The notes: generated by a model not told the origin, from the sequence alone. Shown: positions 626 through 62,605, counted from the first letter of the stretch. The stretch is DNA of 64,000 bases from Macrostomum lignano (GCA_002269645.1 NIVC01000038.1:434001-498000), one strand, 5' to 3'. Program-made: numbers and translations.

Positions 626-654
626 AAATAAGAAATACCACTCAATTCACCAAA

Positions 655-3810: not shown

Positions 3811-3994
3811 GCCAGACGGGTGATGGCAGGTCGTTTAATTGAATCTAATTTTACTGTAGGCCAACTATAGGCTATTGTTAATCAGAGAATTTTCATTTTC
3901 AAATCAGAAATCAGAGGATATAAAAAAAACTATTTTTATTTGTTAGTTAACAAGCGAATCTATACTAAACAATATCCACTGTGTAACTGGGCTT

Positions 3995-4925: not shown

Positions 4926-4929
4926 AAGT

Positions 4930-11799: not shown

Positions 11800-12312
11800 A
11801 AAATAGATAAAAGATTGAAGGTGGGAAAGAGATTAGAGATAGGAGACTAGAGATTAAGAAAATGAGACTAGAGATGGGAGATTAATGATTGAAGATTGGA
11901 GATGGAAGATCAGAGATTGCAGATAGGAGATTAGAGATTGGAGACGCATGATTAGAGATTGGAGATGGAAGATTAGAGATTGGAGACGGGAGATTAGAGA
12001 TTGGAGATGGGAGATTAGATATTGGAGATTAGAGATTGGAGATGGGGGATTAGAGATTGAAGATGGGAGATTAAAGATTGGAGGTTAGAGATTGGAGATG
12101 GGAGATTAGACATTGGAGATGGGAGACTAGATATTGGAGATGGGAGATTAGAGATTGGAAATGGAGATGGGAGGTTAGAGATTGGAGATGGGAGATTAGA
12201 GATTGGAGATTAGAGATTAGAGATGGGAGATTAGAGATTGGAGATAGGAGACTGGAGATTGGAGACGGGAGATTAGAGATGCGAGATTAGAGATTGGAGA
12301 TGGGAGATTAGA
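11800..12312. repeat. 21-bp minisatellite (gggagattagagattggagat) downstream of the ACOT paralog 1 stop
   Basis: Direct tandem repeat. Confidence 0.85.
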
Positions 12313-12395
12313 ACTAGCAGTGGTGATAAGACACGCCAAAGATAAGACAGAGGTGAAGAGAACTGAACCCACCGCAGACCCAGCCATCAGTCAGT

Positions 12396-19559: not shown

Positions 19560-20105
19560 CCGCCAGATTCGTATTTAGAACGGCCACGGGCTCTGACCAC
19601 GCCTTGCAGCATGTACTTGCCGCTGTACCAAAAGCCCACGTGGACGCAGGCTCCGGATTAGTTGAAGTTGTTAAAAAGTTTTTCGATAGAAGAAGAGAGT
19701 AAGGTTCTGCTGTCTCCTGAATGAGACGCCAGCGATGAAGAACTCGTTCGGGTCCGCAGGCAGCACCGAGCCGGTCTGGAATCTGGCTAAGTAACCCGGG
19801 TTCAGGTTGAGGGCGCGGTTCACTCCGTGCATCACTGAGAACTCCTGTAGGTGGTCGCGTATGTTGTCGGATCCGATGCAGCTGCTCAGCTCCAGAAAGA
19901 CTGCTTTACGTGGGGTTCTCTTCAGGCGTAGCAACCAGGTTTAGGACGCCATGAAGTCCAGACTTGTGGAGTCGTCCACCCACTGCCGAGACGAGACTCC
20001 GTCCATGCGAGCGCCCTGCGCCCTCACTCGTCCAGGTCACATTGAGAGATTCCACGTGGTTTCCTCTGTCCCTCGGAGCCGCACACCAGATTCTCCAGCG
20101 CTGGA
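19560..20105 (-). pseudogene. 5'-truncated fragment of a LamG/concanavalin-like secreted protein gene (inverted paralog of 23792-24805)
   Basis: It aligns at DNA level with 24195-24750 (ENLVCGSEGQR, MDGVSSR.WVDD, QTGSVLP.DP..FFI.G). It carries an in-frame TAA where the paralog has TAC, plus frameshifts. Confidence 0.65.
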
Positions 20106-20129: not shown

Positions 20130-23100
20130 AACTTAGCCCGGCTTCTTGCTCTGCGGGAAAAAAGCTCTGCATCAGATCTCCGAGCGTGGTAGGTGAGGTC
20201 CCTGCCAAAATGGCAGTAACGTCGTCAGCATACCCGACGTGGTGGTGGTGGTGGTTCAGCCAGAGCTAGTCCGGGGGGGGCGCATTTGCGCCCCTATCCT
20301 CGCGACGACGGACAGCGACAGGTTTGATCCAAGGACGTCCTCCCGGATGTCTGCGTGTGCCGGGCACTGGATCATGAGGTGTTTAAGGTCCTCCTCGGCT
20401 TTACCGCCTGCTGGGTAGGTCGCGGATGGCTCCAGACCGATGCGGTGGCGACATTTGCGGAGGCGGGGGCAGCAGCCGGTGCGAAGCTGGGCCAGGGTCA
20501 CTTGGGCTTTGCGCCCGAAGCCCAGTCGTAGGCGTTTCGGTGGCCTTCCTTGTGTGGCAGAGCGATGCGTCGTGCAATGCTGGTCATTGTCGTAGGCCTG
20601 GTTGAGGTCCGAGGCTGCCAGCATAGCGATGGCCGAGCGAGTGCTGCGGAGGTCCAGAGGAGCGACTGCTTGGGGGAGCCGAGCCGCGTCGCACGCTGTG
20701 CTGTCCGCCAGGTCGTTGAGCCGCACGTCGCAGTGTCCGGGGACCCACTGGATGTGGTGGCCCGACGTGACTCTCCTGAGCAGAGCCCAGATGTCCCTGC
20801 AGCATGGCGAGAGGTGCGGTGATGGGCCAGCGAGGAGGCTCCGGAGCAGAGACTGCGAGTCCGTGGCGCAGCGGAGCTCGCTGCTGCCCGGCCATGGCAG
20901 GATGTCGAGGGCCAGCTGAAGAGCGCACTCCTCGGCTCTGAAGGACGAGGTGCAGCTGCCTGCCGGGGCCTGTAGCCGTTGCGGTGGGTGGCCGGGGACG
21001 ATCAAGACGGCGCCCTCACCGCCGCGCAGAGTGCCGCCGGTCGCAGAGCCGTCAGTCCAGAGCTGTAATTCTGGCTGCGGGAGGGCGGCTAGAGTTTAAG
21101 GGCGGTGGCTTTACGGATGTGCGGCGGGTCCTCGCGGGACGTCGAGCGGCAGAGGTCAGAGGTGATGGTGACCCGGCAGACGGCGTGCCAGGACGGGATC
21201 AGCGCGTTGTCCATCTCTTTCGGCGCGTCTTTGATGCCAGCGCGGCGGATCAGTGTCCTGGCGCCGGAGCGCCTGTCCCGGCGGAAGCCGCCGTTGACGC
21301 CATGGGCGCGAAGTCTCGGAGCGTTTTTAAGCTCGGAGAGGCGGCGGGGGGGGCTGGCTGGCGTTGCCTCAGATTCCTGTGAAGGAGGGTGGCGCCAGCG
21401 GTCGCAGCATGCGAGGTGAGAGGTTGGAGCCTGGCTTCTTGAAGGAGTGAAGGATAGGTAGTGGACCGGCAGCAGCCAGTGATGTCCCTGGCGGCCGCAT
21501 TGTGAGCCGTCTCCACCTCCTGGCGGCATGAGTCCGAAGCGAAGTTCAGCCAGTCTGCCGCGCCATGGAGGACGGCAGATTCGGCGTAGGTGCGATACAG
21601 GCGTGAGATGGTGTGCGAGTCCTGCCCCCAGTCACGGCCAGTGAGGCACCTCAGGACACTGGTGCGTCTTTGCAGGTTACTGCGCTGGATAGAGGCATAG
21701 TGGCGGAATGTAAGCTGCGGATCCAGGTGAACGCCAAGCAGTTTTGGATGCAATTCGAAAGGGGCCTGGGAGTCGCCGAGTATGATTCATGGCTGCACCT
21801 TTCGGTTAGTCTCACGCGGGTCGAGAGAGAAATACGCGACAACCGACTTTGGTCCTGCTGAATTCCACCTCCCAGGTTCGGGACCACAACAGGAGCCAAT
21901 CAGCCGCGCATTGCAGAGTTTGCTCGCACTCGCGGACGGTCGTTCCCTGAGCTCCAAAGGTGCTGTCGTCGGCGTAATTTATTGTCAGGACGTCCTCAGG
22001 CGCGCCATCCAGGAGGTCGTCCATGTAGACGATCCACGTACAGGGTCGGGGCGAGGACCCAGCCTTGAGGGAGGCCATCGGAGAAGATAAGGATCCGGCT
22101 TCTGGTTCCGTTCCAGGTGACGCGGGCGCGTCTGTCTGAGAGGAACCTTTTGAGCCATCGGTTCATGCAGGTGGGGACCCTCTTGCGGTGAAGTTTGAAG
22201 GTTTGGGCATTTCGCCACACGCGGTCGTAGGCTCTTGAGAAATCTACGAGGAGGAGAGCTGTGCGCTTGGCTGGCTTCTTCGCCTGCAGGCCGTCAAAGA
22301 TGTACTGCGTGACCGCAGTGAATTGCTCCTCAGTGGAGCGGTACCTACGGAAACCGGCCTGGGCTGGGTTGATCAAGCAGCCGTCTTCTAGGAAGTGGGT
22401 GAGGCGTTCGTTGACCATCCTTTCAGCGATCTTTGCAACGCATTAAAGAAGGCAGATCGGGCGAAAGTTGGCAGTGAGGTCCGGTGATTTTTTTATCGGC
22501 TTAGGGATCAGGCGAATATTGCCGAGGCGCCAGGCGGCGGAGACCTTCGCCTTTCTCCACGAAAGGTTGATGGTGTACAGGAGGAGGGCCTTAGCGCGCT
22601 CGGAGACGTTCTTCAGCATGATGTTAGAAACGCCGTCGAGATCCGGGGTCGAACGGACCGGGATGGCACGTAGTGCTCTGTCCAGGTCTTGAGGTGAGAA
22701 GTCGGAGCAGATGCCGGTGTGTTCTCCCAGGCAGCTGCAGGGGGCCGCCAGGGCTGCTCTGGCTTTGATGGCGATAGCTTTGTCACGCTGCTTGTCCCTG
22801 GGCAGACGGCTGACTGTTGTGTACTCTTGCAGAAGAGGTCAGCCTTTTGGCGGTCTGAAGTGGCAACGCCTCCGGTTAGGCTTTTGATCGCAGCGGACAG
22901 CCGGCATGCCGGTGCTCGGCTGTCTAAGGTGCGAATGATTCTCCAGAGATCTGCTGACTTCAGTTCTGCCTGATGGTCGCTGAGAAACTCTTGCCACAGG
23001 GATTCTTTAGCCTTACGGATGGCCTCGGTTGCGGTGAGTGCCACAGTCTGGAAAGCCACAGCAAGCGTCTCGTTGTTTGGGTCCGCCCTGAGCTTTTCTA

Positions 23101-23400
23101 GTCCTTCGCGCCGAACATTGCAGGCAGATTCGACTTCGGGGCTCCACCAAGCGATCGGGGCGCGCCTGGCGCCTTTGGAGATCGCCCTGTTCGCCATGCG
23201 AAGTATGGTGTTAGCGAGCTTGGCCGCCGCCCCTGAGGCGGTCCGGGTGGGCGGTTGGTCCAGTGCATACCCGACGTTGAAGACGGGGTCGGGTCGTGGA
23301 TCGCCCAGAATGGCGTTCATGACCAAGTTCTAGAGCGTCGGGGTGAGGTCTCCGCCGTGGCTTCCTCCCTTACAGACTCTGGCGGAGGCAGTTTGCCAAA
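20130..23400 (-). mobile_element. Old non-LTR retrotransposon RT fragment (R1/LOA-like), split by the Ingi-like insertion
   Basis: Joining 23400-23265 to 20227-20130 restores RVCKGGSHGGDLTPTL*NLVMNAILGDPRPDPVFNVGYADDVTAILAGTSPTTLGDLMQ, i.e. RT motifs G.PQGG.LSP.LWN and YADD. The clade is assigned by eye. Confidence 0.75.
20241..23264 (-). mobile_element. 5'-truncated, inactive Ingi/I-group LINE (RT + RNase H + C-terminal zinc knuckle remnant)
   Basis: RT motifs include NFRPICLL, QAGFR, LLVDFSRAYDRVW, GLPQG, YADD and KLLGVHLD..L. RNase H motifs include WTDGS, SSFRAE, TDSQS and QWVPGH. There is an (ACC)5 tail at 20255-20241 and a 13-bp TSD gcatacccgacgt at 20228-20240 and 23265-23277. Several frameshifts and stops; no endonuclease domain. 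Confidence 0.9.
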
Positions 23401-23791
23401 GCAGTTGTGTGGTGACCGTATGGTTGGAGATCATGTTGGAGAGCACTTTCACACTCCAAAGAAAATGTTATTGAAGATTGAATTTGGGCACTAGACTAAT
23501 CCATAAGTTGCTAGCATTCTGTTTGTGTCTCCTGTATCCATTTGCCTCTATCTTCTAGCCTATCTGTGACAATGTGGCACCAACTCTCCTTACAGCTTAT
23601 TCGCAGGGCGAGTTCTCACTTCGGTCACTGAACGCACTAAGGGGTGACAGATCTACCAGTTGCCAAGTTGTTGTAGCCTATAAGCTGCTTAAGCCAATCC
23701 GGGCACTTTCACTGATCAGCCAAAAAGTTAAAAACTGCGATGGGATTTGATGCCGGGACTCTTAATACAGACAGACTCACAAAAGCTTGCA

Positions 23792-24805
23792 ATGCGCCAC
23801 AAAATGTCCAGCCTCCTACATCTCGCTGTTCTGTGCGCCCTGCTCTCGGACTCTGACTGTGTGAACGGAGACAAAATTGCACAGCACAGAGTAGCCAACA
23901 ATGACAGCCTGAACTTGTCGGTGTGTGTGTGGCAGACGCCGCAACTCTCCGCCTCCCTGCTCGACTGCTTCGTGTCGAGTCAGTCGTTCCGTCTCGGCAG
24001 CGTCGGCGTGGTGCAGCGGAACAAGCGAGACGTGTGGTGAGGTGTGCCGCCTGCTCAACATGAGCTCGATCAACTGGACGACACCGACTGCGGGAGTGGC
24101 CGCTGAGAGCACCTGCGAAACTGTGGTGGACTCGGAGTACGACGCGATCGCTGCGAACGAGCACTTCAGCGCTGTGTGGGTCGGAGACAGGGGACCGGTG
24201 CTGGAGAACATGGTGTGCGGCTCCGAGGGACAGAGGAACCCCATGAAGTCCAGCGTCTCGGCTTTTCGTTCTCGTGGATGAACGAAGGCGCTCGCATGGA
24301 CGGAGTCTCGTCTCGGCTTTGGGTGGACGACCCCACAGGTCTGGACTTCACGGCGTCCTACACCTGGGCGCTACACCTGAAGAGAAAACCGGGTGACCAA
24401 TGTTTTATGGAGCTGTCTGCAGATTCTGAAACAGGAGGTGGCCCAACCGATCATTTCTGGGAGTACAGCAACGTTCCTGGTTTGAAGCGCTGTTTGCACC
24501 TGTTTCCAGGTGCACCCATGGCTTACCAAACCGGCTCTGTGCTGCCCTCCGATCCTGATCAGTTCTTCATTGTTGGATTGGCGTTCAACAGATTGGCGCC
24601 CAGGTGCAAATTCTTCTTCGAGTCTGCGTTTGTGCCGGAGACTATCAACAAAATGCAAACCGTTGTCTACAGCCAAGCCGGTGCTGGCATCAAGATCGGC
24701 TGGCGGTACTCATCCGGTCTGCTCGACGACGTGGTCAGGGCTGTAGGCGTGGCCACCACGGTGCTGACTGAGGACGAAATCCGCCAGCTCTTCGGCCAGT
24801 TCTGA
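23792..24805 (+). pseudogene. Secreted protein gene with PAN/apple-like N-terminus and LamG-like C-terminus, two frameshifts
   Basis: A signal peptide (MSSLLHLAVLCALL) is followed by three consecutive ORF frames joined by shifts near 23970 and 24240 (the latter in a C4 run). Domain calls are by eye from Cys spacing and beta-rich composition. Assembly indels cannot be excluded. Confidence 0.55.
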
Positions 24806-25159
24806 TTTTACGATAGCAACATGATGCATTGTGACGCATTATATATTCAGTGTTTAAAATTCCCAGTGTAATTGACGATTATGAAAACATTTGATAAACT
24901 AACAAGCTTTATAAATTTAATTAAAGTGGAATTACATTGCAATAAACAAGAAACGTTGTGTCTTGCACAATATAAATTTGAATGTCAGCGATAAAGACAC
25001 AATAAACAAAATGTTGCACCCAAAACCATATGCTTTTTTTCAATTAATATTTCCTATATTTCATTGCAAAATAAAAATTCTTATGAAAAATAAAAGTAAA
25101 GACGAATTTTTCTTTTTCAAATATAGATTTTTATGATGAATAGAATCCCAGGTAAAACC

Positions 25160-25265
25160 ATACTTCTGGAGCTGGGCAGCTGCATCGGATCCGGCAACAT
25201 GCGCGCAACCACCCGCAGGAGTTCTCAGGGATGGCCGTAGTGAGAGTCGCCCTCTACCTGAACCG
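25160..25265 (+). pseudogene. Third short fragment of the LamG-like family
   Basis: ttctggagctgggcagctgcatcggatccggcaacat...gcaggagttctcag matches the reverse complement of about 19800-19900. Confidence 0.6.
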
Positions 25266-29422: not shown

Positions 29423-30979
29423 ATGTCGTCAGACGCGAACGCCACTCAGTGCAGCATCAGAGCATGCAATAAATCGATCCACGATGAGGGACCCCGCACC
29501 GGAGTGTCTCTGTGCAGAGTTCACTTCGACAAGGAGGTGCTTTAGCTCACTGAGCAGAAGGACATCCTGATGAAGAAGCTGCGCGCTCTTAGGGACTTCT
29601 CAGACACGTCGCAGCTGCGAGTTGAGCAGAGCGCGCTAGCAGCAGAGATCGAGGACGTTAGAGAGATGTTCGACGAGCTGGAGGAGGAGCTGCGACAGTG
29701 GCGGCAGCGGACAGAGGCTCGAGTGCAGGCGGTGCACGACTCGGTAGCTGATCACCTGAGAGACGCGTCGGAGGCGGAGCAGTGCGAGAAGGACCTGACG
29801 GCTGCTTCCGAGGCTGGAGACGTGCGGGAGATGGCGAAGCTTGCAGCCACCACCGAGCTGTGGCTGGAAGAGGCCAGCGAGCGATCGGCGAAGTTTAACG
29901 AGACTCGTTTGAAGCTGCGCGAGCGGCAAAGCTCGGTGAGTCATGGACTCAGTAGTGATGTGGTCGTTCGGTCCGTCGGAGACGTCGCGGCAGGTGTGCA
30001 GCAGCTGAAGCTCGTCATCAACAAGCATATGACTAGCGTGATGCAGCAGTGCTGGCTTGAAGATGAAGATGGACAGACTTCGACCAACAGGTCAATGACT
30101 ACAATTGACAAACTTGAAGATCAACCATGTCTCTTGTGTTGCTGCTCAAACACTGCTGGATTTGTCTGCGACTCAGCAGGTCGCATTGCAAAGGCTGGAC
30201 CATCGAGCTCTGGCACCAAGCCGCTGCCTCAACCGAGCATCTTTATTTCATTTGACGAGAAAAAAGTAGATTATTTGCAGGTGGTGTCTCTCGATGGAAG
30301 CGAGAGGCTGGAGTACCACTCAAAACTGAACTGGAGAGAATTTATCACCGGACTTCACTGCGACAATGAGAAGCAGATGCTGTTTGTGAGCCAGTATCGG
30401 TCTGTGACAGTTTCTGACCTGAGCGGAGAAATTACTCGAATAATCACGGCAGAGAGCCTGGGCCTGAGTGCTTTAGGAGTTCATGCCATTTGCGGGAACA
30501 TGGACAAACTGTTTGTGTCAAATATGAACTTAAAAGGTGTTAATTTAGTCAGCAAAAAGTCCGGAAATCTCGAGAGCTCACTTGACGTTTCACATCTTGG
30601 TGACAATTTGGACGAGATCGCCCTACACGGAAGCAAGATTTTGCTGGTAGATAATAGTCTCGGCAAGATTCGTAAAATATGCTCCATCAACGGTCAGCTG
30701 ATCTCGGGTTATCCTGCCGAAGCCGATAGCAGATTGATCCGGCCTGTTCAAGTCGCTGTGGACAGCAGAGGTGTTCTGTTCGTCACAGATGCTGTGAATA
30801 ACACAGTTTGTGCGTTTTTATGCTCGGGAGAACTTCTTCAGACTTTTGGCGGGATACGGCAAGAAGAAAGTTTTTTTTCAAAACCCTTTGGTTTGATTGT
30901 TGTGCAGTCAGAATCAGGTGAGTTGCTAGTTGTTGCCGATTGTCATAATAGTTGTCTGCGAGTCTTCCCGTTGGATTAA
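29423..30979 (+). pseudogene. NHL-repeat / coiled-coil gene, copy A, with premature TAG at 29543-29545
   Basis: Colinear with the intact 519-aa copy at 44272. AAG is changed to TAG at codon 41, and the remaining 469-aa ORF from ATG 29570 is open. Confidence 0.75.
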
Positions 30980-35483: not shown

Positions 35484-35520
35484 CTCAGGGGAGTCGGCGG
35501 AATGGGCAGTAATGCTTTTC

Positions 35521-36719
35521 CGTAAAGACGGTCTCTGACTGTTTTTACCCTGGCTGCCTCTCTGGTAGCTTGTCTTAGGGTTGTGCGCAATCCGATTGAC
35601 CTGGCTTATGCTAGCCCAATTAACTAAGGGTCCGCCCCGGAGGGGCTGTGCCTGTTCTAAAAATAACCCAACCATTTTTTTTTCGTACATTCCAATTTTA
35701 TTGGCCCTCGGCCTTGGGTTAGGGGGGTGTACCTGGAGTGAGTGTGTACTCTGGACTGCACTGTGGCTAGAACGGGACTGAGCCCCCCGGTCTTACCCGC
35801 CCTGCAGGAGAAAATGACCATTCACGAAGGTGTACGGTAGAGCCTAGTTGATGCCAGCCCTGAGGCTGAGCCCCGGGTTGCAGGTTTGCAATACGCCTGC
35901 TTGTAGGATTCAGGTGCTCCTCCTTTCTGCCATTCTTTTTTCTGGGCTGGCATCCCAGCGCGGTTTTATCCCTTTGCTTTAATGCTTTTATTCTTCTATC
36001 TGGCCATTAGTTTGCCTTCCAATCTTTGGAGTTATGAGCTCTGCCCTCCCTGCCCGGTCCATCCTGCTCTGTCCTTGGTCCATCTGCTGGCTCCTCTGAT
36101 TGTCTCCCTGCCTAAGTGTCTCTGGCTCTCATCCTGACAGTGGATTGGTGTCCTGGGAAGGATGTTCGTCCCGAATCGGGGATACCGGCTGAGTCCGGGT
36201 CCTCTTGCTCCTTGTGCCCCTTCCCGACCCCTTGGCCTGGCCTCCAATATAGAGCTGGATAGGCGATACCCCTTGTGGCTTGCAGCCCTATAGGTTTTTT
36301 GGTCGCTAGCCTGATAGGAGACTCGCCCTCGGATACAAGCCTTCCAGACTCGCTCCAATTGTTAAGCCCTTTCCAAGACTTCTGGGTTTCCCCGCTCTTG
36401 GACGGCTTTCAGTAGTATACCAAACATTTTCAATTCCAATTCTGTTTTTGAAGCGCACTCCCGAGGACTTGTCTGCTGGGTGGTGGCCTGGGTGGATTCG
36501 GTCCTTGTACCGTCCCTGATTCCACTAATATTGGGTTGGCGGTGTCTTGTACCATAGGCTTGGGCTAGTAGCTCCAAAAATTCCCCCTGGCCAAGACGTC
36601 GGGGTCCAATCAGGAGGGTATCTCGGGCTTAGGCCCTGGAGGTGCCACTCAGCGGCAGAGCCCTCCCCTGGGCTGATCCACGAGTAGCCCCCGGCTTCCC
36701 ACCCTCGTTTAACAACAAC
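35521..36719 (+). mobile_element. Retroposed insertion with (AAC)n tail and spliced-leader-like 5' end
   Basis: TSD aatgcttttc at 35511-35520 and 36720-36729. The 3' end is ccctcgttt(aac)3 and the 5' end is (c)cgtaaagacggtctctgactg. No RT motif was found inside. Confidence 0.8.
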
Positions 36720-36989
36720 AATGCTTTTCGCCGGTTGTGTGACAATGTCGCTTAAAGTGCGCCAGGGTGCACACAACCCTTCTTTTAACTAGTAGCATCC
36801 TAATCTTCTGTAAATTAGAATCATTGCACATGTAGCGACTTAGTACTTAAACACGCAACGAGGATAACACAACTGATCATATTCAGATGCTGCCATCACC
36901 AATCAAGATTGAGGAATTATCTCATTCGCCCTCGGTCACGACAGCCAGTAGCAGCGCTTCCTCAATCATAATTAGACAACCTACTCGGA

Positions 36990-36996
36990 TATAAAA
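36990..36996 (+). promoter_or_regulatory. TATA box of peptide gene copy A (copy B at 46956-46962)
   Basis: TATAAAA lies about 80 bp upstream of the ATG and is conserved in both duplicates. Confidence 0.55.
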
Positions 36997-37071
36997 GAGA
37001 CATCATTTTAAATAGTCAAGGCTTTTATTGCCAACGAATCTGCTTATTAGTTCTCTAGTTAATTAAACACA

Positions 37072-37406
37072 ATGAGCGGCAAAGTAATCTTTGTGTTGCT
37101 GATCATTATCTTAGCTCTGACTGGTGTCAACCAATCAATGCGATTACCAGCGTCTGAAGATTCTGTAAGTACCTCCGCCTTATAGCAGCGTTGACCTGGC
37201 TACAGCCAATAGTTGTTTAAAATTAAAAGCCGGAAAATTTCCAGCAGCCACCATCGGAGCTGAATGATTTTCTCCGCGTCATCCTGGCTGAGGCCCGAGC
37301 CAGACTGGGCGGTAATTTCGCCGACAAGAGGTCTGGCGAGAAGTCGTCGCGCTACGGTCGCTGCAGCGGAGTGTACCATCCGGTGGCGTGCTTCGGAGTG
37401 CAGTGA
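37072..37406 (+). CDS. Secreted prepropeptide with C-terminal disulfide loop, copy A (84 aa)
   Basis: Exons are 37072-37164 (donor GTAAGT) and 37245-37406 (phase 0, NAGNAG acceptor). Translation: MSGKVIFVLLIIILALTGVNQSMRLPASEDS|QPPSELNDFLRVILAEARARLGGNFADKR SGEKSSRYGRCSGVYHPVACFGVQ*. Confidence 0.8.
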
Positions 37407-38946: not shown

Positions 38947-41216
<2,270 letters not shown>

Positions 41217-41636: not shown

Positions 41637-42689
41637 CTGCCATGGAGATTTTGAATAGGCTGATGGGAAGTTTTTGTCAATGATCCTGACCAATTAGATC
41701 TTGAAAATAAAAACAGTTGGAAAACGTGTCAATTCAGACTGGTAATTTTGCTTAGCAGCAAACTAAAAATGCCGCACCCGGTCCCAAACCAAGCAGCCCA
41801 TTCCGCTGATTCCTGAGTATATGCAGGCTAAGCCAGTTCTGTACGCTGGCACGCACTCACACTCACGCTCACACAGGATGTACAGGTGACCTTTGACTTT
41901 CTAATCAAGTCAGGCATGTACTCTCTGTGTCTTTGGGAGCTGGCCTTCATGCCTGTGAATCGCACGACAAATACTCGTTTTTACAAGGAGTTTTACAAGG
42001 GATTTTACAAGGGGAGATGGGATTTTAAATGGGGAGATGGGATTTCAAATGGGAGATGGGATTTCAAATGGGGAGGTCTTATAAAGCAATGGATTGGTCA
42101 AAGTTCTAAGTCAGCATCAGCATTGGTGGATTGTTTATTTGTTAATATCAATATTTCATTGGCTCGCTCATTTTGACACTTCGTTGTCCAGGGCCTGAGA
42201 TTCCTGAGGTCCTCCCAAGTCCCTTGTATTGTAGTATACAACAATGAACCATACCACTCCAATCCATTGAATTTGAATGCAGAGAATAGAAAAAGATGTT
42301 TTTGGAAAAAAAAATTAGGCGAGATCCGTAGTTTCATTACTAAAAAAAATACCTACTTTCACCCAGACAATCCTACTGAAGTCCCTATTTTTCGTAAACT
42401 TTTTTCCTACTTCCAATTCTTTCCAACTCTTTCCTACTTCCAAAAGCATTTGTTTAAAACCCTTAAAAGCCTGACTATCAATATTTCCTCCCCTGACTAA
42501 ATTACTAACAGTAGTGCAAATGCGTATCTGTGCTAGAGACATGTATCTCGTTAGTCAAGCCAAAACTTAAGCATAAAACTTGAAAGTTACTGATGTACCT
42601 GCCCCTATCAATAATATGAAAAGAGTTTGCAGTCATATGGATGTTTCCTGAAGCCAAACAAGCCAGTCGCACTGGAAACTGATCGCTCA

Positions 42690-43200
42690 GGCCAGCGTGC
42701 GCCGCGTCTACTTGTTGTTCAAGCGAGTCCGTCAGCGTCCAGGACTCAGTACTGCATTGCATTGGATTGGAGTATTGTATACAGCTGTATAGCAGGACAG
42801 CCTCTACCACCGCTTGGAACAGCGCCACCTTCAGACCGTTAAATGGGCCTCAGACTGCAGGACAGCCCTCTCACAGAACGAAAGGGGCTGCTCAGGAAAG
42901 TCCGCGGCGACGCCGCGCAGATCCTCGCGGACACCGGGAACCGGACTGCCGCGATAGATGAACTGCTGACAACACGCAAGCTTTAGTTTGGTCGGAGATC
43001 TCACCTGTCCATCTGCGCCTCAAGACAAACTTTCAGCCTCGATGTCGTCCACCACGCAGATCACGACGGCCTTCAGCGTGTTGACCAGCAGGGCGACACT
43101 CGCCGCAACAGCAAACAGCTTTAGGAGACGTACGTAGCAGCTAACGTTGCGATTAAAACGCTATTGAGACGCAATTATAGTCTTCGAATCCGATAGTTTT
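42690..43200 (-). mobile_element. Decayed RTE-like LINE RT 3' remnant (copy B)
   Basis: ALFQAVVEAVLLY...ESWTLTDSLEQQVDAAHA; paralogous to 27840-28330. Confidence 0.65.
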
Positions 43201-43709
43201 GTTCGGACTTGCATCGTAGCGTATGGAGGACCGTAACGCCATTTAGTCTAAAGCAACCGTTTGGCTGGATTGTGGCAATCATTTTCATGATTCTAGCAGC
43301 CAACGGCAGCCCAATGTCCACTCAATAAATAGTGTTACCAACCAAATAAAGCGGAATTCGGGATAAACACGAGCATTAAGGTCACAAAATCGTAGCATGC
43401 ATGAATCAGAAATCGAGATCTATATTTCTACGACTCTGTAATTCGTCAGAACTGTTTTCTAGAATTGTCGATAGCTGAAGTGCGGGGTTGTCTAGATCGC
43501 ATCAATAAGAGACCATTTAAAAATTGTCCAAAATTAAATAAAACATTTTAAAATGCATCATTTTAAAAGCTGGCATTAAGTAAAGCCTGGATGAAGTTCT
43601 CTTTTTTGCGAATCTGACTGCACATAAGTGTACACTGTTGTTGTTTAATAATAGTCGTAATAATTCATTTCACCTGCTCTAATTGTCAGATGTGTAACCG
43701 GCCGTCAGC

Positions 43710-44271: not shown

Positions 44272-45831
44272 ATGTCGTCAGACGCGAGCGCCACTCAGTG
44301 CAGCATCAGGGCATGCAATAAACCGATCCACGATGAGGGACCCCGCACTGGTGTGTCTCTGTGCCGAGTTCACTTCGACAAGGAGGTGCTCAAGCTCACT
44401 GAGCAGAAGGACAACCTGATGAAGAAGCTGCGCGCTCTTAGGGACACTCCAGACACGTCGCAGCTGCGAGTTGAGCAGAGAGCGCTAGCAGCAGAGATCG
44501 AGGACGTTAGAGAGATGTTCGACGAGCTGGAGGAGGAGCTGCGACAGTGGCGGCAGCGGACAGAGGCTCGAGTGCAGGCGGTGCACGACTCGGTAGCTGA
44601 TCGTCTGAGAGACGCGTCGGAGGCGGAGCAGTGCGAGAAGGACCTGACGGCTGCTTCCGAGGCTGGAGACGTGCGGGAGATGGCGAAGCTTGCAGCCACC
44701 ACCGAGCTGTGGCTGGAAGACGCCAGTGAGCGATCGGCGAAGTTTAACGAGACTCGTTTGAAGCTGCGCGAGCGGCAAAGCGCGGTGAGTCATGGACTCA
44801 GTAGTGATGTGGTCGTTCGGTCTGTGGGAGACGTCGTGGCAGGAGTGCAGCAGCTGAAGCTCGTCATCAACAAGCATATGACTAGCGTGATGCAGCAGTG
44901 CTGGCTTGAAGACGGAGACGGACAGACTTCGACCAACAGGTCAATGACTACAATTGACAAACTTGAAGATCAACCATGTCACCTGTGTTGCTGCTCAAAC
45001 ACTGCTGGATTTGTCTGCGACTCAGCAGGTCGCATTGCAAAGGCTGGACCATCGAGCTCTGGCATCAAGCCGCTGCCTCAACCGAGCATCTTTATTGCAT
45101 TTGACCAGAAAAAAGTAGACTATTTGCAGGTGGTGTCTCTCGATGGAAGCGAGAGGCTGGAGTACCACTCAAAGCTGAACTGGAGAGAATGGATCACCGG
45201 ACTTCACTGCGACAATGAGAAACAGATGCTGTTTGTGAGCCAGTCTCGGTCTGTGACAGTGTCTGATCTGAGTGGAGAAATTACTCGAATAATCACGGCA
45301 GAGAGCCTGGGCCTGAGTGCTTTAAGAGTTCATGCCATTTGCGGGAACATGGACAAACTGTTTGTATTAAATATGAACTTAAAACATGTTCATTTAGTAG
45401 GCAAGAAGTCCGGAAATCTCGAGAGCTCACTTGACGTTTCACACCTTGGTGAAGATTTGGACGAGATCGCCCTACACGGAAGCAAGATTTTGCTGGTAGA
45501 TTGTTATAGTCTCGGCAAGGTTCGTAGAATATGCTCCATCAGCGGTCAGCTGATCTCGAGTTATCCTGCCGAGGCCGGTCTCAGATTAAGCCGGCCTGTT
45601 CAAGTCGCTGTGGATAGCAGAGGCGTTCTGTTCGTCACAGATGCTGTGAATAACACAGTTTGTGCGTTTTTATGCTCGGGAGAACTTCTTCAGACTTTTG
45701 GCGGGATACGGCAAGAAGAAAGTTTTTTTTCAAAACCCTTTGGTTTGATTGTTGTGCAGTCAGAATCAGGTGAGTTGCTGGTTGTTGCGGACCGTCAGAA
45801 TAGTTGTCTGCGAATCTTCCAGTTGGGTTAA
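44272..45831 (+). CDS. RING-less TRIM/NHL-like protein: N-terminal C-x4-C...C-x2-H zinc finger, coiled coil, NHL beta-propeller (519 aa, single coding exon)
   Basis: Uninterrupted ORF with CSIRAC...LCRVH, a heptad-rich region, and NHL-type repeats RPVQVAVDSRGVLFVTDAVNNTV and KPFGLIV...LVVADRQNSCLRIF. Confidence 0.85.
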   Translation: MSSDASATQCSIRACNKPIHDEGPRTGVSLCRVHFDKEVLKLTEQKDNLMKKLRALRDTPDTSQLRVEQRALAAEIEDVREMFDELEEELRQWRQRTEARVQAVHDSVADRLRDASEAEQCEKDLTAASEAGDVREMAKLAATTELWLEDASERSAKFNETRLKLRERQSAVSHGLSSDVVVRSVGDVVAGVQQLKLVINKHMTSVMQQCWLEDGDGQTSTNRSMTTIDKLEDQPCHLCCCSNTAGFVCDSAGRIAKAGPSSSGIKPLPQPSIFIAFDQKKVDYLQVVSLDGSERLEYHSKLNWREWITGLHCDNEKQMLFVSQSRSVTVSDLSGEITRIITAESLGLSALRVHAICGNMDKLFVLNMNLKHVHLVGKKSGNLESSLDVSHLGEDLDEIALHGSKILLVDCYSLGKVRRICSISGQLISSYPAEAGLRLSRPVQVAVDSRGVLFVTDAVNNTVCAFLCSGELLQTFGGIRQEESFFSKPFGLIVVQSESGELLVVADRQNSCLRIFQLG

Positions 45832-46429: not shown

Positions 46430-46740
46430 CTAATTTAGGACTAAATTGGAATCTCGGCTTGGCTCTGCTCGTACAATTAACGCCCTTGAGGGCCAACCCC
46501 CAAAGCACAGGGAAGTGTACATGTACATGCCTAACGATAAATTAAGTTAGGGCCGCTGTACACTCCTGTGTGAGTGTGTGCTTGCGCGTATGACTGCATA
46601 CGTATCCTGCATGTGTGCTTACTCAGGGGAGTCGGCGGAATGGGCAGCAATGCTTCTCGCCGGTTGTGTGAGAAAGCTAGTCGCTTTAAGTGCGCCAGGG
46701 TGCACACTGCCCTCTGTCCTTAACTAAATAGCATCTTAAA
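46430..46740 (+). mobile_element. SINE body, uninterrupted copy (5'-truncated)
   Basis: Colinear with the reverse complement of 60990-61270. It provides the empty sites for the three insertions in copy A. Confidence 0.8.
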
Positions 46741-50322: not shown

Positions 50323-51978
50323 CAGGCTCGGCAAACTCCGGGCCCGTGGGCCACATGCGGCCCGCCAAGCCTTTCGATCAGGCAACTAGGGTCCTTTGAA
50401 ACTTCACAATAGCAATCCCGTCCGCTCCTCTCAGCTCTCTCCTTTCATGTAAGAGAGTACTCTATGTAAGAACTCTCCCACAGAGAACTACATGTAACTG
50501 CTTTCTCTTACCGTCTGGTCAGCAGTAGTATCATGCGCTAGATTCTCTGTCTGGCCCTTAAAACAAAAATCCCCCCTAATAAACCCTTTATGTATAGATT
50601 ATGGATGATGAGGGGCTTGGTCCTTATCTGATTCTCTCAATTTCTCTCTCTTTCTCCCTCTCAAGTTCTATGTCTCAAAACATGCAAGTATCCAGATTGT
50701 TACAGACTATAGAATAAGATATTTCCAAGCTTAGATATGCGTCACGCTTGTGAATGATCAAATAATTTAGAAAAATTAGCCAGTGTCTTTCAGCTTGAGC
50801 AGCTGTGTCACTATTTTATTGAGTTGAACTCAACTCAGACCAGCGGATGCACAGCGAGTTATGTGCTAAAATCAAGGTCATGGCATACTATTGGGCTTAA
50901 AGTTTTTAAACCGTCAAAACAAATCAGTTTAGAGAAGCCCAAAGCAGACTAACAAAAGAGCAACAATTTGAAAGACAATCATAATTAGCCAATATTTAAT
51001 TTTTTTTAAATAATCGATTCAATTTATTTGTTAAAATTTCAACCAATTAAATAAGGTTTTTTTGCAAAATAAATAAAGCCAAAATGAAAAACAATTGGCT
51101 AATGAAATTATATAAAAATGACTACAAAACCAATTTTGCAGACAAAGAAATAAATCTTAATTAAAAAAACTTCACAGCACTCCGTTTGATTTTACTTTGG
51201 CAAAAAACTGAAATTAAATTATCAAAAAGTTTGTCATTTATACGCACAAAATGCAATATAATACTTAGGTTACAACAAAGGTTGGAAAACTTTTTTATTA
51301 CGTCAGGGGCCAGACAGAGAACCTAGTGCATGACTGCGGGGCAGCGAAGAGAGGATAGAGGGAATAGAGAAAAGAGATAGAATAAAGTGGACAAGAGGAG
51401 AGAAGAGATGACGCGAAAGGAGAGAAGATGAGTAAGAGGAGATAAGAGAAGAGAGGAGAGAGGAGACGAGAGAAAAGATGGAGAGAGGAGGCAGGAGAAA
51501 AGAGAGAGGAGAGAAGAAAAGAGAGAGGAGAGAAGAAAAAGATGGAGAGGAAATAAGAGAAGAGGAGAGGAGAGAAGAGATGGAGAGTAGAGAAGAGAGA
51601 GGAGAGGAGAGAAGAGAGAAGAAAAGGAGAGGAGAAGAGAGAGGAGAAAAGAGAGAGGAGATGGAGAGGAGAGAAGAGATAGAGAGTAGAGAGAGAGGAG
51701 AGAAAAGAAGAGAAAAGAAAAGGAGAGAAGAGAGAGGAGAAAAGAGAGAGGAGATGGAGAGGAGAGAGAAGGAAGGAGAGAAGAGGTGGAGAGGGGAGAG
51801 GAGAGAAGAGGAGAGGTGAGAGGCAGAGAAGACAAGAGAGAAGAGAAGGAGATTAGAGAAGAGAAAGAGAAGAGAGCTGAAAAGACACAAACCTTAAGCG
51901 AGCTGGATCACTATGGTGAAATTCCAAAGGACCCAAGGGCCGCATGTGGCCCGCCGGCTGGAGTTTGCCGACCCTGGG
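50323..51978. mobile_element. Degenerate hAT-Charlie-like element, copy B
   Basis: Left end caggctcggcaaactccgggcccgtgggcc and right end ggagtttgccgaccc; paralogous to 38947-41216. Confidence 0.5.
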
Positions 51979-52063
51979 GTTACAGTGGTTAATTCCTAAA
52001 TAGGCAATAAAACAATTTGATAATTTTATGTTTGCTGTCAATTATTTTCAGTTTAATCTTATG

Positions 52064-55000: not shown

Positions 55001-55262
55001 TCTGCGATGGGTCCTGTTTGAGAGACCAAAAGAGCCCCATACTGTCAAGTCCAGTGTAAGTTCCTCCAACACTGCAGCTGGAGTCCAAGTCAAGCCTCCC
55101 TGCTTCATCAGTCATATAGTGACCAAATGCTGAGAATGAGCCATAGGTCTCCTTAATTTGTAGGTGCAGAGTCACTGGAGAGTTTGTGGGCAAACCAGAG
55201 ACCTTGATGGAAATTCGCTCATCTACCAATGATCGTAGCTTATTTACTGAGATAGTTGCCAT
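52064..55262 (-). CDS. ACOT: Acyl-CoA thioesterase / BAAT-family hydrolase, paralog 2 (3 coding exons, 430 aa predicted)
   Basis: Exons are 55262-54797, 54030-53537 and 52396-52064, with phases 1 and 0 matching. Motifs GVSAG, LDD and AGHLLEPP are present and the C-terminus is ARL (PTS1). An acceptor 14 nt upstream of the ATG leaves room for an upstream exon. Confidence 0.92.
52495..53505. repeat. 21-bp minisatellite (ggggagatgggatttttaaat) in ACOT paralog 2 intron 2
   Basis: Direct tandem repeat. Four units of it recur at 42019-42075. Confidence 0.9.
54032..54590. repeat. 18-bp minisatellite (gggatttgagcatggggt family) in ACOT paralog 2 intron 1
   Basis: Same family and same position as 14603-15200. 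Confidence 0.9.
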
Positions 55263-55388
55263 GGATACAATTTTGTCTGAAATTGTAAAGTAAGATGTTT
55301 GACATTTATATATAATGTTTAAGATTTGTGTTGCAAGTAAATTAGGACCAATATAGAAACAAAGAAACTGAGATCAGGCCTTTATATA

Positions 55389-60038: not shown

Positions 60039-62605
60039 ATGAAAAAAAAGTGCCGAAGTTTTCGTTCGCGCCCAAGAAAGACCAGTGCCTGGTCCATGTT
60101 TTTGAAGACAATGGGAACAAGTAAGATTTTGTTTGGCTTTTTTGCTTTGAACTTCAGTGTTTGTTTCTTTTTCGTAAGTTATACTTTTTTGTTTTAAATG
60201 GAGTAATGATCTACAATTATTTCGGATAATTTTTTCAGATAACTTTTCCAAGGAACGCATGGCTTTTTTAAGCGACAAATTTAAAAGTCTAACTGCTGAA
60301 GAAAAATCTGTGTACGAACGTGCTGCACGAGAAAAAGTTCAGCAAACTCCCTCGGTGCATACATTGGAGGATTTGGTAACTACATTGAATTGCATACTGT
60401 GCACCAAAGTTTAATTTTAAATTTTGTACTTGTCCAGACTGACAGACTGTGTGGTAGTACCGCCTGAGCGTAAATGAATAAATTCGCTTAATCACTTGCA
60501 GGCACGTCTAATGTTTGCCGACTATCATATCATTATTATCACGAAGAGTCGCAGCGGCTCCAATATTCGCACTTGTGCTTCTCCTGAAGTCGCAGGAATT
60601 TTAAATGACAATATTGGAGTTCTTCAAGTAAGCTAATGTTTCTTGTCATGCAATTGTTTTGATGCAATTACATACAATTGCAATTTTGAGATAAAAGGCC
60701 TTAAAGCTTAATAGATGTAATGACTAATGTAATGTAATGGTATTTGTTCTCTACCATTGCAGAAATTTGAATTACTTTCCACCGGACTAGCACAGTCGTC
60801 GGCTCAAAAACCGACGGTTGAGCATATGCGTAAAGAAGTTCGCGCATCTGTTCGCATGGCATATGGTGAATTAATTATGTATTTTTTTCATAGTATTTTT
60901 CAGACCCACTTGTGCTAAATTTTAGATAATTTAAGTCTAAAGGGAAAGAGAAAATCTCACATTTAGGTCTGTAGGTTGCTTTTTTATTTTTTTATCAAAG
61001 GCAGGGGGGTTGCGTGCACCCTGGCGCACTTTAAGCGACAGAGGCACACAACCGGCGAGAGGCATTGCTGCCCATTCCGCCGACTCCCCTGAGCAGGCAT
61101 ACAAGCGCGCGGATACATACGCAGGCACACACTCACACAGGAGTGTACAGCGGCCCTAACTTTATATTATCGTTAGGCATGTACACTTCACTGCGACTTG
61201 GGGGGTTGGCTCTCAAGGTCGTTAATTGCACGAGCAGAGCCAAGCCTTGATTCCAATTCAGCACCAAATTAATGTGACTGCACTTGGAATCGAGCCTGGG
61301 TCGCTGGCACACCAGAGCAGCTGCGCTACCGCTGGGCTACGCCCCCCCCCCCACCTGTAGGCTGCTTTAAAAAGTAATCCATTTTTTCAAATTTATATAT
61401 ATTTATACTTATGTATCTGTTTACTTACTTTTTTCACAGCTCAAGCCGGAATGGGCGCCAAGTTGAACTTCAACAACCTCGGCGGCAGTTTTTTTCCGAG
61501 TATTAAACGCCCTGCACTAATGAATTACACGGAGCTGCGGGAGTTGTATGATTCGCGGGATAAATTAAAGTTTATTCCCCATCGAGCCAGTGCTGCTGAC
61601 CTCGGTCATCTCGAGGATAATGCCGTCTCCGATACACCCGTAGAGAATGTTGATGATGCTGTCGGTCATCGTCCTGCCGGTGGCATTGCTACTCTGCCGG
61701 GCAGCGCCGTCGGTCATCGTCCTGCCGGTGACATTGCTACTCTGCCGGGCAGCGCCGTCGGTCATCGTCCTGCCGGTGGCATTGCTACTCTGCCGGGCAG
61801 CGCCGTCGGTCATCGTCCTGCCGGTGACATTGCTACTCTGCCGGGCAGCGCCGTCGGTCATCGTCCTGCCGGTGACATTGCTACTCTGCCGGGCAGCGCC
61901 GTCGGTCATCGTCCTGCCGGTGACATTGCTACTCTGCCGGGCAGCGCCGTCGGTCATCGTCCTGCCGGTGGCATTGCTACTCTGCCGGGCAGCGCCGTCG
62001 GTCATCGTCCTGCCGGTGACATTGCTACTCTGCCGGGCAGCGCCGTCGGTCATCGTCCTGCCGGTGGCATTGCTACTCTGCCGGGCAGCGCCGTCGGTCA
62101 TCGTCCTGCCGGTGGCATTGCTACTCTGCCGGGCAGCGCCGTCGGTCATCGTCCTGCCGGTGACATTGCTACTCTGCCGGGCAGCGCCGTCGGTCATCGT
62201 CCTGCCGGTGGCATTGCTACTCTGCCGGGCAGCGCCGTCAGTCATCGTCCTGCCGGTGGCATTGCTACTCTGCCGGGCAGCGCCGTCGGTCATCGTCCTG
62301 CCGGTGGCATTGCTACTCTGCCGGGCAGCGCCGTCGGTCATCGTCCTGCCGGTGACATTGCTACTCTGCCAGGCAGCGCCGTCGGTCATCGTCCTGCCGG
62401 TGGCATTGCTACTCTGCCGGGCAGCGCCGTCGGTCATCGTCCTGCCGGTGACATTGCTACTCTGCCGGGCAGCGCCGTCGGTCATCGTCCAGCCTTTCGA
62501 ATTACATATACCGGTCCTCGGCCAGCCGGTGCGGCTGGTCATTCTGCAAACATCAAAGTCGGTAGTACATCACAATCTCAAGTTCTTATTAAAATTTTAA
62601 AGTGA
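60039..62605 (+). CDS. HMG-box protein with GTF2I-like repeat and 16-aa tandem repeats (5 exons, 537 aa predicted; may extend 5')
   Basis: Exons are 60039-60120, 60239-60375, 60502-60627, 60763-60865 and 61440-62605. All are GT-AG with phases 1, 0, 0, 1 giving one open frame. The HMG box reads RPRKTSAWSMFL...KERMAFLSDKFKSLTAEEKSVYERAAREK. Confidence 0.82.
60975..61345 (-). mobile_element. Full-length tRNA-derived SINE in intron 4 of the HMG gene
   Basis: The minus strand has head GGGGCGTAGCCCAGCGG (A box) and GGCTCGATTCC (B box), a ~270-bp body shared with 46430-46740, and an A-rich tail ataaaaaaaataaaaaa. Confidence 0.8.
61658..62495 (+). repeat. 48-bp coding VNTR (AVGHRPAG[G/D]IATLPGS) x17 plus a partial unit
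   Basis: Counted from the translation; units are nearly identical. Confidence 0.95.

What the first reader, a model, noticed from the sequence alone, without database searches (positions are those of the whole stretch)
35511..36729. Retroposed element that begins with a spliced-leader-like hairpin
The 1.2-kb insert has TPRT hallmarks: a TSD, an (AAC)n tail and an empty site in unit B. Its first bases, CCGTAAAGACGGTCTCTGACTG, match 21 of 22 nt of the 5' half of the Macrostomum lignano spliced leader as I recall it (CCGTAAAGACGGTCTCTTACTGCGAAGACTCAATTTATTGCATG; unverified), including the CCGT-AAAG-ACGG stem-loop. It then diverges, so it is not a normal trans-spliced retrocopy. A second hairpin follows (GCTGCC-TCTCT-GGTAGC). 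This may be an SL-RNA-derived or SL-mimicking retroposon family that borrows the leader for capping, stability or translation, or a template switch onto SL RNA. I know of no description, but I could not search.
Basis: partly seen in the sequence, partly recalled or inferred. Interest (0 to 1): 0.8.

Follow-up and report, generated by a model that had tools for sequence, protein, structure and literature searches.

The report
Retroposed element headed by half a spliced leader
A 1.2-kb non-coding retroposed insert in the flatworm Macrostomum lignano really does begin with the first 22 bases of the worm's spliced-leader RNA, folded into a 12-bp hairpin. It looks like a chimeric retrocopy, a kind already seen elsewhere, and I could not test whether it belongs to a family.

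Summary
A 1,199-1,200-bp insert (35520/35521-36719) ends in (AAC)3 and is flanked by a 10-bp target-site duplication, AATGCTTTTC. Two paralogous sites in the same window are empty (46649-46658 on +, 61057-61066 on -).

The window is Macrostomum lignano: it is 97-99.8% identical to Mlig_3_7 scaffold NIVC01001253.1. The recalled 44-nt spliced leader (SL) is the published one, and the insert's first 22 nt match it at 21 of 22 positions, starting at the SL RNA's own 5' end.

Beyond nt 22 the insert has no similarity to the SL exon or to the rest of the SL RNA gene, which I recovered from a metagenome contig. It is therefore not an ordinary trans-spliced retrocopy and not an SL RNA gene.

One new point: nt 3-29 form a 12-bp terminal hairpin. 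The single "mismatch" (G18) closes its stem, and the element-specific UUUUUAC pairs with the SL's GUAAAGA (chance about 0.001).

The two further copies I found are segmental duplicates of this same insertion. About 158 kb of M. lignano DNA held no independent copy, so "family or one-off" stays untested.

Best reading: a chimeric retrocopy made by reverse-transcriptase template switching onto SL RNA, like U6-L1 chimeras. The main rival is 5' transduction from a copy sitting in an SL RNA gene. Partial leaders attached to LINE/LTR elements were already reported in parasitic flatworms.

The parts
35511..35520 (+). Upstream copy of the 10-bp target-site duplication, AATGCTTTTC. Its last C can equally be read as SL nt 1.
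   Evidence: The empty sites carry AATGCTTCTC or AATGCCTCTC once.
35520..35541 (+). SL-derived head, CCGTAAAGACGGTCTCTGACTG. It equals SL nt 1-22 with T18G and starts at the SL RNA 5' end (within 1 nt).
   Evidence: 1 mismatch, none in shuffles. SL verified. The genomic SL RNA gene at L004 616-659 is identical to the published SL.
35522..35548 (+). 12-bp 5'-terminal hairpin, GUAAAGACGGUC-UCU-GACUGUUUUUAC, with two G.U pairs. The 5' arm and loop are SL sequence. The 3' arm is SL nt 18-22 (with G18) plus the element-specific UUUUUAC.
   Evidence: minimum-energy and centroid folds agree; z = -5.6 for nt 1-55; a 7-mer pairing with GUAAAGA at this fixed position has a frequency of 0.0013 among window 7-mers.
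35552..35570 (+).
35549..36710 (+). Non-coding body of the element (the whole 1,200-nt insert is 54% G+C, against about 37% in the flanks). It has no ORF over 108 aa, no protein homologue, no Rfam family, and no similarity to the SL RNA beyond nt 22.
36711..36719 (+). (AAC)3 tail. One paralogous copy has (AAC)2. The tail runs in phase into the AA of the TSD, as expected if the nicked target annealed to the RNA tail.
36720..36729 (+). Downstream copy of the TSD, AATGCTTTTC.
46649..46658 (+). Empty paralogous target site in unit B (AATGCTTCTC). The flank here is 83% identical to the filled unit.
61057..61066 (-). Second empty paralogous target site (AATGCCTCTC on the minus strand).

Best explanation
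A LINE reverse transcriptase copied a non-coding RNA (here called X) that ends in (AAC)n, priming from a nick at C|AATGC (target-primed reverse transcription, TPRT). On reaching the 5' end of that RNA it did not stop. It switched template onto the abundant nuclear SL RNA at about nt 18-22 and ran to that RNA's capped 5' end. The result is one insert, SL(1-22)+X, inside a single 10-bp TSD. This is the trans-splicing-organism counterpart of the U6-L1 chimeric retrocopies of mammals.

Shown: the TPRT anatomy, the SL origin of the head, its start at the SL RNA 5' end, and the absence of the rest of the SL RNA.

Inferred: the switch itself. The detailed model is as follows.
1. X RNA began 5'-ACUGUUUUUACC.
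2. The cDNA end CAGT annealed to SL ACUG (nt 19-22).
3. The odd G18 is the extra G that reverse transcriptases add opposite a cap.
4. The 11-12 bp of complementarity between the X 5' end and SL nt 3-14 held the SL RNA next to the enzyme.

At this locus the copy has no SL promoter upstream and is probably inert.
For: - TSD, tail and two empty sites.
- 21 of 22 match to the verified SL, placed exactly at the 5' junction, none in shuffles.
- Nothing beyond nt 22 resembles the SL RNA gene recovered in L004 (local score 15, null 14.8 +/- 2.3).
- The element-specific bases right after the match are complementary to SL nt 3-9 (p about 0.0013) and give a 12-bp hairpin with a 3-nt loop. That is the geometry expected if the acceptor RNA was base-paired to the donor's 5' end.
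- The junction shares ACUG.
- All three available copies carry G18, so it dates from the insertion or soon after.
- Template switching by non-LTR reverse transcriptases is established (L1Tc reverse transcriptase, PMC5814959). U6-L1 chimeras and the cap-derived extra G are from my own knowledge: Buzdin 2002/2003, Garcia-Perez 2007, Lavie 2004.
Against: - U6-type chimeras usually carry the whole small RNA. Here only 22 of roughly 105 nt are present, so the switch would have been internal.
- The model needs extension from a mismatched 3' end (C opposite U18).
- It explains one copy only. Meeting a unique event in a single 64-kb window is unlikely unless such chimeras are common or the head is a family feature.
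- No independent copy of X could be examined, so the true 5' end of X RNA is unknown.
- The hairpin with G.U pairs could equally reflect selection on a sense-strand RNA.
Confidence: 0.4

Rival explanations
1. 5' transduction from a master copy lodged in an SL RNA gene. A copy of X inserted into an SL RNA gene between nt 22 and 23. It may have been site-specific, like SLACS, CZAR or NeSL-1, or it may have landed there by chance. It is transcribed from the strong upstream SL promoter, so its RNA starts at SL +1 and carries SL(1-22). Daughter copies made in trans by a LINE all inherit that head. In this sense X would be a family with an SL head.
For: The head starts at the SL RNA transcription start within 1 nt. 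SLACS and CZAR sit between nt 11 and 12 of the trypanosome mini-exon (PMC5814959). A family would make it more likely to meet a copy in a random window. The 597 partial-leader loci next to LINE/LTR elements in parasitic flatworms show that such associations recur.
Against: This locus is not an SL gene: the flanks and the empty sites lack SL sequence. X encodes no reverse transcriptase or endonuclease. This reading does not explain the complementarity of UUUUUAC to the SL 5' end, or G18, except as chance or mutation. No second independent copy was found in about 158 kb.
Confidence: 0.3
2. A functional SL-mimicking head. X belongs to a non-autonomous retroposon family whose conserved 5' module is a co-opted SL RNA 5' end, reshaped into a stable hairpin. 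The module would serve as an internal snRNA-type promoter element, a cap or cap-hypermethylation signal, or a stabiliser.
For: The 12-bp hairpin is unlikely by chance. Its two imperfect positions are G.U pairs, which are tolerated only in the sense RNA. The single departure from the SL (G18) adds a C:G pair to the stem. From my own knowledge: in Ascaris the 22-nt SL is itself an intragenic promoter element of the SL RNA gene (Hannon 1990).
Against: There is no evidence of a family, of transcription, or of conservation. The three copies are one event and identical in the head, so there is no covariation. There is no canonical Sm site (GUUUUUAC, buried in the stem) and no similarity to the SL RNA 3' domain. 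No Rfam family matches.
Confidence: 0.12
3. An ordinary retrocopy of an SL-trans-spliced transcript that later lost or rearranged SL nt 23-44. This is the explanation offered for partial leaders in parasitic flatworms.
For: Thirty percent of M. lignano genes are trans-spliced (PMC8629364). Partial leaders near transposable elements were interpreted this way in PMC12582326.
Against: Trans-splicing joins the full 44-nt exon. There is no GU at SL nt 23-24 to act as a cryptic donor. There is no trace of nt 23-44. All three paralogous copies are identical across the junction. A clean 22-nt deletion that also creates a 12-bp hairpin is an ad hoc assumption.
Confidence: 0.05
4. Chance resemblance to the SL, or a DNA-transposon insertion.
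For: None beyond the fact that only 22 nt match.
Against: No match occurred in 100 shuffles even with 3 mismatches, and the match lies exactly at the insertion junction. There are no terminal inverted repeats. The simple-repeat tail sits at one end only.
Confidence: 0.01

Closest known systems
U6-L1 and other small-RNA/LINE chimeric retrocopies of mammals (template switching during TPRT; own knowledge: Buzdin 2002/2003, Garcia-Perez 2007)
   Same: A small nuclear RNA sequence that starts at its own 5' end is fused directly to another retroposed sequence. A single TSD surrounds both parts. There is no splice-site logic at the junction.
   Different: The donor is SL RNA, not U6. Only the first 22 of roughly 105 nt are present. 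The tail is (AAC)n, not poly(A). The junction region forms a 12-bp hairpin.
Partial leader sequences associated with LINE/LTR elements in parasitic flatworm genomes (597 loci; PMC12582326)
   Same: Same phylum. SL fragments occur in the genome with no other SL RNA feature, next to retroelements.
   Different: Those loci were filtered out and not dissected, and were attributed to trans-spliced retrotransposon transcripts. Here the anatomy (nt 1-22 only, TSD, empty sites) argues against simple trans-splicing.
Relic spliced leaders on retrogenes (dinoflagellate DinoSL retrogenes; PMC6050394, PMC5585692)
   Same: An SL sequence encoded in the genome at the 5' end of a retroposed copy.
   Different: Dinoflagellate relics keep the 3' part of the SL because re-splicing trims the 5' part. 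They sit on coding genes. Here the 5' half is kept on a non-coding element.
SL-gene-specific non-LTR retrotransposons SLACS/CZAR/CRE (trypanosomatids) and NeSL-1 (C. elegans)
   Same: A retroelement joined to the first nucleotides of the SL exon (nt 11/12 in SLACS and CZAR; PMC5814959). Co-transcription from the SL promoter would produce an RNA headed by a partial SL.
   Different: Those elements are autonomous and reside inside SL RNA genes. This copy is non-coding and sits at an unrelated site with no SL sequence in the target.

Membership tests
TPRT-type (non-LTR) retroposed insertion | Target-site duplication flanking the insert, with an unoccupied paralogous or allelic site | tested here: met
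   10-bp AATGCTTTTC on both sides; two empty sites in the window.
TPRT-type (non-LTR) retroposed insertion | Poly(A) or simple-repeat tail at the 3' end only; no terminal inverted repeats or LTRs | tested here: met
   (AAC)3 at 36711-36719; the ends are not complementary.
TPRT-type (non-LTR) retroposed insertion | A partner autonomous LINE sharing the 3' end or tail | not testable with these tools
   The one LINE in the window whose 3' tail I could read (RT + RNase H, 20.26-24.7 kb, minus strand) ends in (CCA)5. No LINE sequence in 19.3-25.3 kb is similar to X. No genome-wide DNA search was possible.
Retrocopy of an SL-trans-spliced RNA (relic-SL retrogene) | The complete SL exon (44 nt) joined to the body at a splice-acceptor position | tested here: not met
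   Only nt 1-22 are present. The second half of the SL is absent from the whole window.
Small-RNA/LINE chimeric retrocopy (U6-L1 type) | The 5' part starts at the small RNA's own 5' end, and one TSD encloses both parts | tested here: met
   The head starts at SL nt 1 or 2; there is a single TSD.
Small-RNA/LINE chimeric retrocopy (U6-L1 type) | The 5' part is the full-length small RNA, down to its 3' end | tested here: not met
   22 of roughly 105 nt of the SL RNA; no donor site, Sm site or 3' hairpins.
Small-RNA/LINE chimeric retrocopy (U6-L1 type) | The 3' part is a copy of an independently known retroposed RNA that elsewhere occurs without the head | not testable with these tools
   No independent X copy in about 158 kb of M. 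lignano DNA. Searches through protein databases were empty.
SL-gene-resident retrotransposon (SLACS/CZAR/NeSL-1) | Inserted within an SL RNA gene | tested here: not met
   The flanks and empty sites contain no SL sequence. A source copy elsewhere in the genome is not excluded.
SL-gene-resident retrotransposon (SLACS/CZAR/NeSL-1) | Encodes a reverse transcriptase and an endonuclease | tested here: not met
   No ORF over 108 aa. The concatenated frames found no homologue among 5.8 billion proteins.
SINE / multi-copy non-autonomous retroposon with a small-RNA-derived head | Many independent copies sharing the same head | not testable with these tools
   The three copies seen are one event: same flanks and TSD, 97.6-98.3% identical.
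SINE / multi-copy non-autonomous retroposon with a small-RNA-derived head | Short (under about 700 bp), with an internal Pol III promoter | tested here: not met
   The element is 1.2 kb. T5 at nt 23-27 and T9 at 35676-35684 would terminate Pol III. A/B boxes were not specifically searched.
SL RNA gene | SL exon followed by a GU donor, an Sm-like site and 3' hairpins | tested here: not met
   Compared with the genuine gene in L004 616-722. No Rfam hit.

The most novel reading that the evidence does not exclude
X is one member of a multi-copy, LINE-dependent retroposon family in Macrostomum whose conserved 5' module is a captured SL RNA 5' end: the transcription start plus the first 22 nt, reshaped into a 12-bp hairpin. 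The module would be used for snRNA-type Pol II initiation, cap hypermethylation or RNA stability. That would make it the first SINE-like family derived from SL RNA.
Probability: 0.15. Interest if true: 0.75.

Novelty: new variant of a known kind. Interest (0 to 1): 0.4.

Why it matters
If it is a one-off or recurrent chimera, it shows that SL RNA can serve as a template-switch acceptor for flatworm LINE reverse transcriptases. That would explain the "partial leader next to a transposable element" loci that confuse SL RNA gene annotation in flatworms. The breakpoints would also report on SL RNA structure and on reverse-transcriptase behaviour in vivo.

If the head is a family feature, it would be a new way for a retroposon to obtain a promoter or cap signal, from the trans-splicing machinery itself. 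It would also be a new class of small-RNA-derived retroposon head.

In either case this copy is probably inert. It lies about 350 bp upstream of a small ORF that starts at 37073, with no sign of function at this locus.

Tried and rejected
1. Fetching other copies through spurious ORFs of X in the 5.8-billion-protein collection: no hit.
2. Harvesting M. lignano DNA through the window's LINE reverse transcriptase: only 37-51%-identical ENA proteins from other organisms. L006 and L007 hold neither X nor the SL.
3. Exact look-up of the window's NHL protein: not on record. Its homologues gave L001, L002 and L005 from Mlig_3_7. L001 holds X twice, but these are duplicates of the same insertion. L002 and L005 hold none.
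4. Rfam at the gathering threshold over the whole window, and at E up to 10 over the region: nothing credible. A U4atac-like hit on the minus strand has E = 8.3.
5. Pattern scans of the bacterial genome collection and the viral collection: no match. It yielded a true SL RNA gene (L004) and a chance hit (L003), so no X-specific metagenome scan was possible.
6. Similarity of X to the LINE sequences in 19.3-25.3 kb, or to SL RNA nt 23-107: none.
7. The idea that X nt 23 onward is an internally deleted SL RNA (shared UUUUUA near the Sm site): rejected as a 6-nt coincidence.
8. Snap-back self-copying as the origin of the hairpin: rejected. The outer arm, loop and CC match the SL at 17 of 17, so the outer arm is SL-derived and not copied from the inner arm.
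9. Inverted matches between the X 5' region and the downstream flank (pairs I2 and I3): at chance level.
10. A stable 3'-terminal structure: not significant (z = -0.9).

Full report
**What is there.** The window carries a 1,199-1,200-bp insert (35520/35521-36719). The whole insert is 54% G+C, against about 37% in its flanks. AATGCTTTTC lies immediately before it (35511-35520) and immediately after it (36720-36729). The insert ends in AACAACAAC (36711-36719). This runs in phase into the AA of the downstream duplication, as expected if the nicked target DNA annealed to an (AAC)n RNA tail.

Two paralogous sites in the same window are unoccupied and carry the target once: GGGCAGC-AATGCTTCTC-GCCGGTTG at 46642-46666 (+) and the same with AATGCCTCTC at 61073-61049 (-). 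The right flank of the filled unit is 83% identical to unit B over 1.1 kb. The insert has no terminal inverted repeats and no ORF over 108 aa. It has no protein homologue in any of the 11 frames tested and no Rfam family. The anatomy is that of a non-coding insertion made by target-primed reverse transcription.

**Organism.** An NHL-repeat ORF of the window (44272-45831) is 90% identical to M. lignano protein BOX15_Mlig032098g1. Window DNA is 97-99.8% identical to Mlig_3_7 scaffold NIVC01001253.1 (L001). The window is therefore M. lignano, either a paralogous or allelic region or another assembly.

**The leader.**
- Later work uses its last 35 nt and describes a 109-bp SL RNA gene with a GTAAG donor and an Sm-like site (PMC8629364).
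- M. cliftonense and M. hystrix have the same leader, with 5' ends GCCGT... and CGT... (PMC10468722 supplementary table S3).
- Window 35520-35541 matches SL nt 1-22 with one mismatch (T18G). It is the only such site in 64 kb, with none in 100 shuffles even at 3 mismatches. The second half of the SL is nowhere in the window.
- The C at 35520 is also the last base of the TSD. The insert therefore starts at SL nt 1 or 2, the same 1-2 nt uncertainty as in the published 5' ends.

**The real SL RNA gene, for comparison.** A scan of JGI metagenome contigs with the SL pattern found contig Ga0302322_100095745 (L004). It carries CCGTAAAGACGGTCTCTTACTGCGAAGACTCAATTTATTGCATG|GTAAGACACCGGTGATCCAATTCTGGATCAGTATTTTTAGCAGCCCTTTCATGGGCTTCC, next to a Na/K-ATPase beta-chain gene. 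This is a Macrostomum-type SL RNA gene from an environmental flatworm. Its fold has the expected hairpins around an AUUUUUAG site. Beyond nt 22 the insert shows no similarity to this gene: the best local score is 15, against a shuffle mean of 14.8 +/- 2.3. The head is therefore the 5' half of the SL and nothing else. It is not a trans-spliced leader (that would be all 44 nt) and not an SL RNA gene or pseudogene.

The predicted fold of the first 55 nt is not the 4-bp CCGU-AAAG-ACGG stem. It is a 12-bp hairpin, GUAAAGACGGUC-UCU-GACUGUUUUUAC (35522-35548), with two G.U pairs. The energy is -24 kcal/mol, z = -5.6, and the minimum-energy and centroid folds agree. The single departure from the SL, G18, makes the closing C14:G18 pair. 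The first seven element-specific bases (UUUUUAC) pair with SL nt 3-9 (GUAAAGA). A 7-mer able to do this occurs at a frequency of 0.0013 among window 7-mers. The sequence just inside the junction is therefore non-randomly complementary to the SL 5' end.

**One event or a family?** Mlig_3_7 scaffold L001 holds the element twice (12446-13641 at 97.6% and 42213-43407 at 98.3%). Both copies have the same flanks and the same TSD, and their heads are identical, G18 included. One has (AAC)2. Their flanks are as diverged as the elements (97.4-97.5%). These are segmental duplicates of a single insertion. That insertion happened after the split from units B and C (83% identical) and before the latest duplications.

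No independent copy, and no weaker relative, exists in the window, L001, L002 or L005, which together are about 158 kb. Every route to more M. lignano DNA failed or was capped.

**Mechanism.** Ordinary trans-splicing followed by retroposition is rejected. The full exon is missing, SL nt 23-24 are CG and not GU, and all three copies agree across the junction. Three readings remain.

(A) Template switching. The reverse transcriptase finished the X RNA and jumped to SL RNA, copying it to its 5' end. This explains the start at SL nt 1 and the single TSD. The ACUG shared at the junction fits as microhomology. G18 fits as the extra G added opposite a cap. The complementarity fits as an RNA-RNA tether that put SL RNA next to the enzyme, leaving exactly the 3-nt loop seen. 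Against it: U6-type chimeras normally carry the whole small RNA, a mismatched 3' end has to be extended, and a unique event is unlikely to be met in one window.

(B) 5' transduction. A master copy of X sits in an SL RNA gene at nt 22/23 and is transcribed from the SL promoter, as SLACS and CZAR sit at nt 11/12 of the trypanosome mini-exon (PMC5814959). All daughters would then carry SL(1-22). This predicts a family, but does not explain the hairpin or G18.

(C) A selected SL-mimicking head. The G.U-tolerant hairpin and the stem-closing G18 fit this reading, but there is no evidence of a family, of expression or of covariation.

I rate A 0.4, B 0.3, C 0.12, a rearranged trans-spliced retrocopy 0.05 and chance about 0.01.

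**Relation to what is known.** A 2025 survey of SL RNA genes in 24 parasitic flatworms discarded 597 candidate loci that lay next to LINE/LTR elements and whose only SL feature was a partial leader. It attributed them to retrotransposon transcripts that had been trans-spliced (PMC12582326). Relic leaders on retrogenes are standard in dinoflagellates. Small-RNA/LINE chimeras are known from mammals (own knowledge). The present case is a well-resolved example in a free-living flatworm. It shows that at least one such locus cannot be explained by trans-splicing, and it adds the terminal hairpin. It is a variant of a known kind and not a new kind, unless the head proves to be a family feature.

**Verdict.** Interest is moderate (0.4). 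The decisive test is a whole-genome BLAST of X and of its head, which these tools could not do.

Noticed in passing
L004 616-722 (JGI metagenome contig Ga0302322_100095745, 3,076 bp): A complete Macrostomum-type SL RNA gene: a 44-nt exon identical to the published SL, a GTAAG donor, a GAUCCA/UGGAUC hairpin, an AUUUUUAG Sm-like site and a terminal hairpin. GCCGTAAA is repeated 17 nt upstream of the gene. It lies about 1 kb upstream of a Na/K-ATPase beta-chain ORF (1774-2922). Flatworm DNA is therefore present in an environmental metagenome.
   Followed up: partly
window 20259-24709 (-): A degenerate, frameshifted non-LTR retrotransposon with RVT_1 (E = 9e-17) and RNase H (E = 2e-8) domains. It ends in a (CCA)5 tail at about 20240-20255. 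A 5'-truncated fragment of another LINE, beginning at its YADD box, follows directly. Neither is related to X.
   Followed up: partly
window 19713-20104 versus 24195-25264: Inverted copies (72-89% complementary, arms up to 129 nt) of the LINE 3' fragment bracket the RT/RNase H element. The arrangement (nested insertion or inversion) was not resolved.
   Followed up: partly
window 29570-30979 and 44272-45831 (+); L001, L002, L005: Paralogous intron-poor genes for NHL-repeat proteins; the most distant homologue found (P0003) is named B-box-type by UniRef. They mark the duplicated units A and B and have homologues at 28-90% identity on three Mlig_3_7 scaffolds. The gene model for P0001 in GenBank spans 31 kb across two duplicated units and looks like an annotation artefact.
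   Followed up: partly
window 170-15200, 39040-41115, 51390-54580, 57320-59900, 61660-62500: Very dense minisatellite and microsatellite arrays, for example 21-mers of 40-59 copies, (CT)290 at 39313-39891, a 34/68/102-bp array of 2.4 kb, and a 97%-identical 48-bp array lying inside an ORF at 61451-62605.
   Followed up: no
window 36990-37330: The insert lies about 350 bp upstream of a small ORF starting at 37073, with a TATAAAAG box at about 36990. At the equivalent position L001 has an annotated 84-aa gene (14007-14341). Any effect of the insertion on this gene is unknown.
   Followed up: no
window 54765-55373 (-): An ORF with an acyl-CoA thioesterase/BAAT N-terminal domain (Pfam PF04775, E = 2.5e-30). 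It is probably one exon of a host gene.
   Followed up: no
L003 1742-1761 (Ga0315268_10009635): A 20-nt match to SL nt 3-22 (GTAAAGACGGTCTCTCACTG) without the rest of the SL. I judge it a chance match in an unrelated contig.
   Followed up: partly
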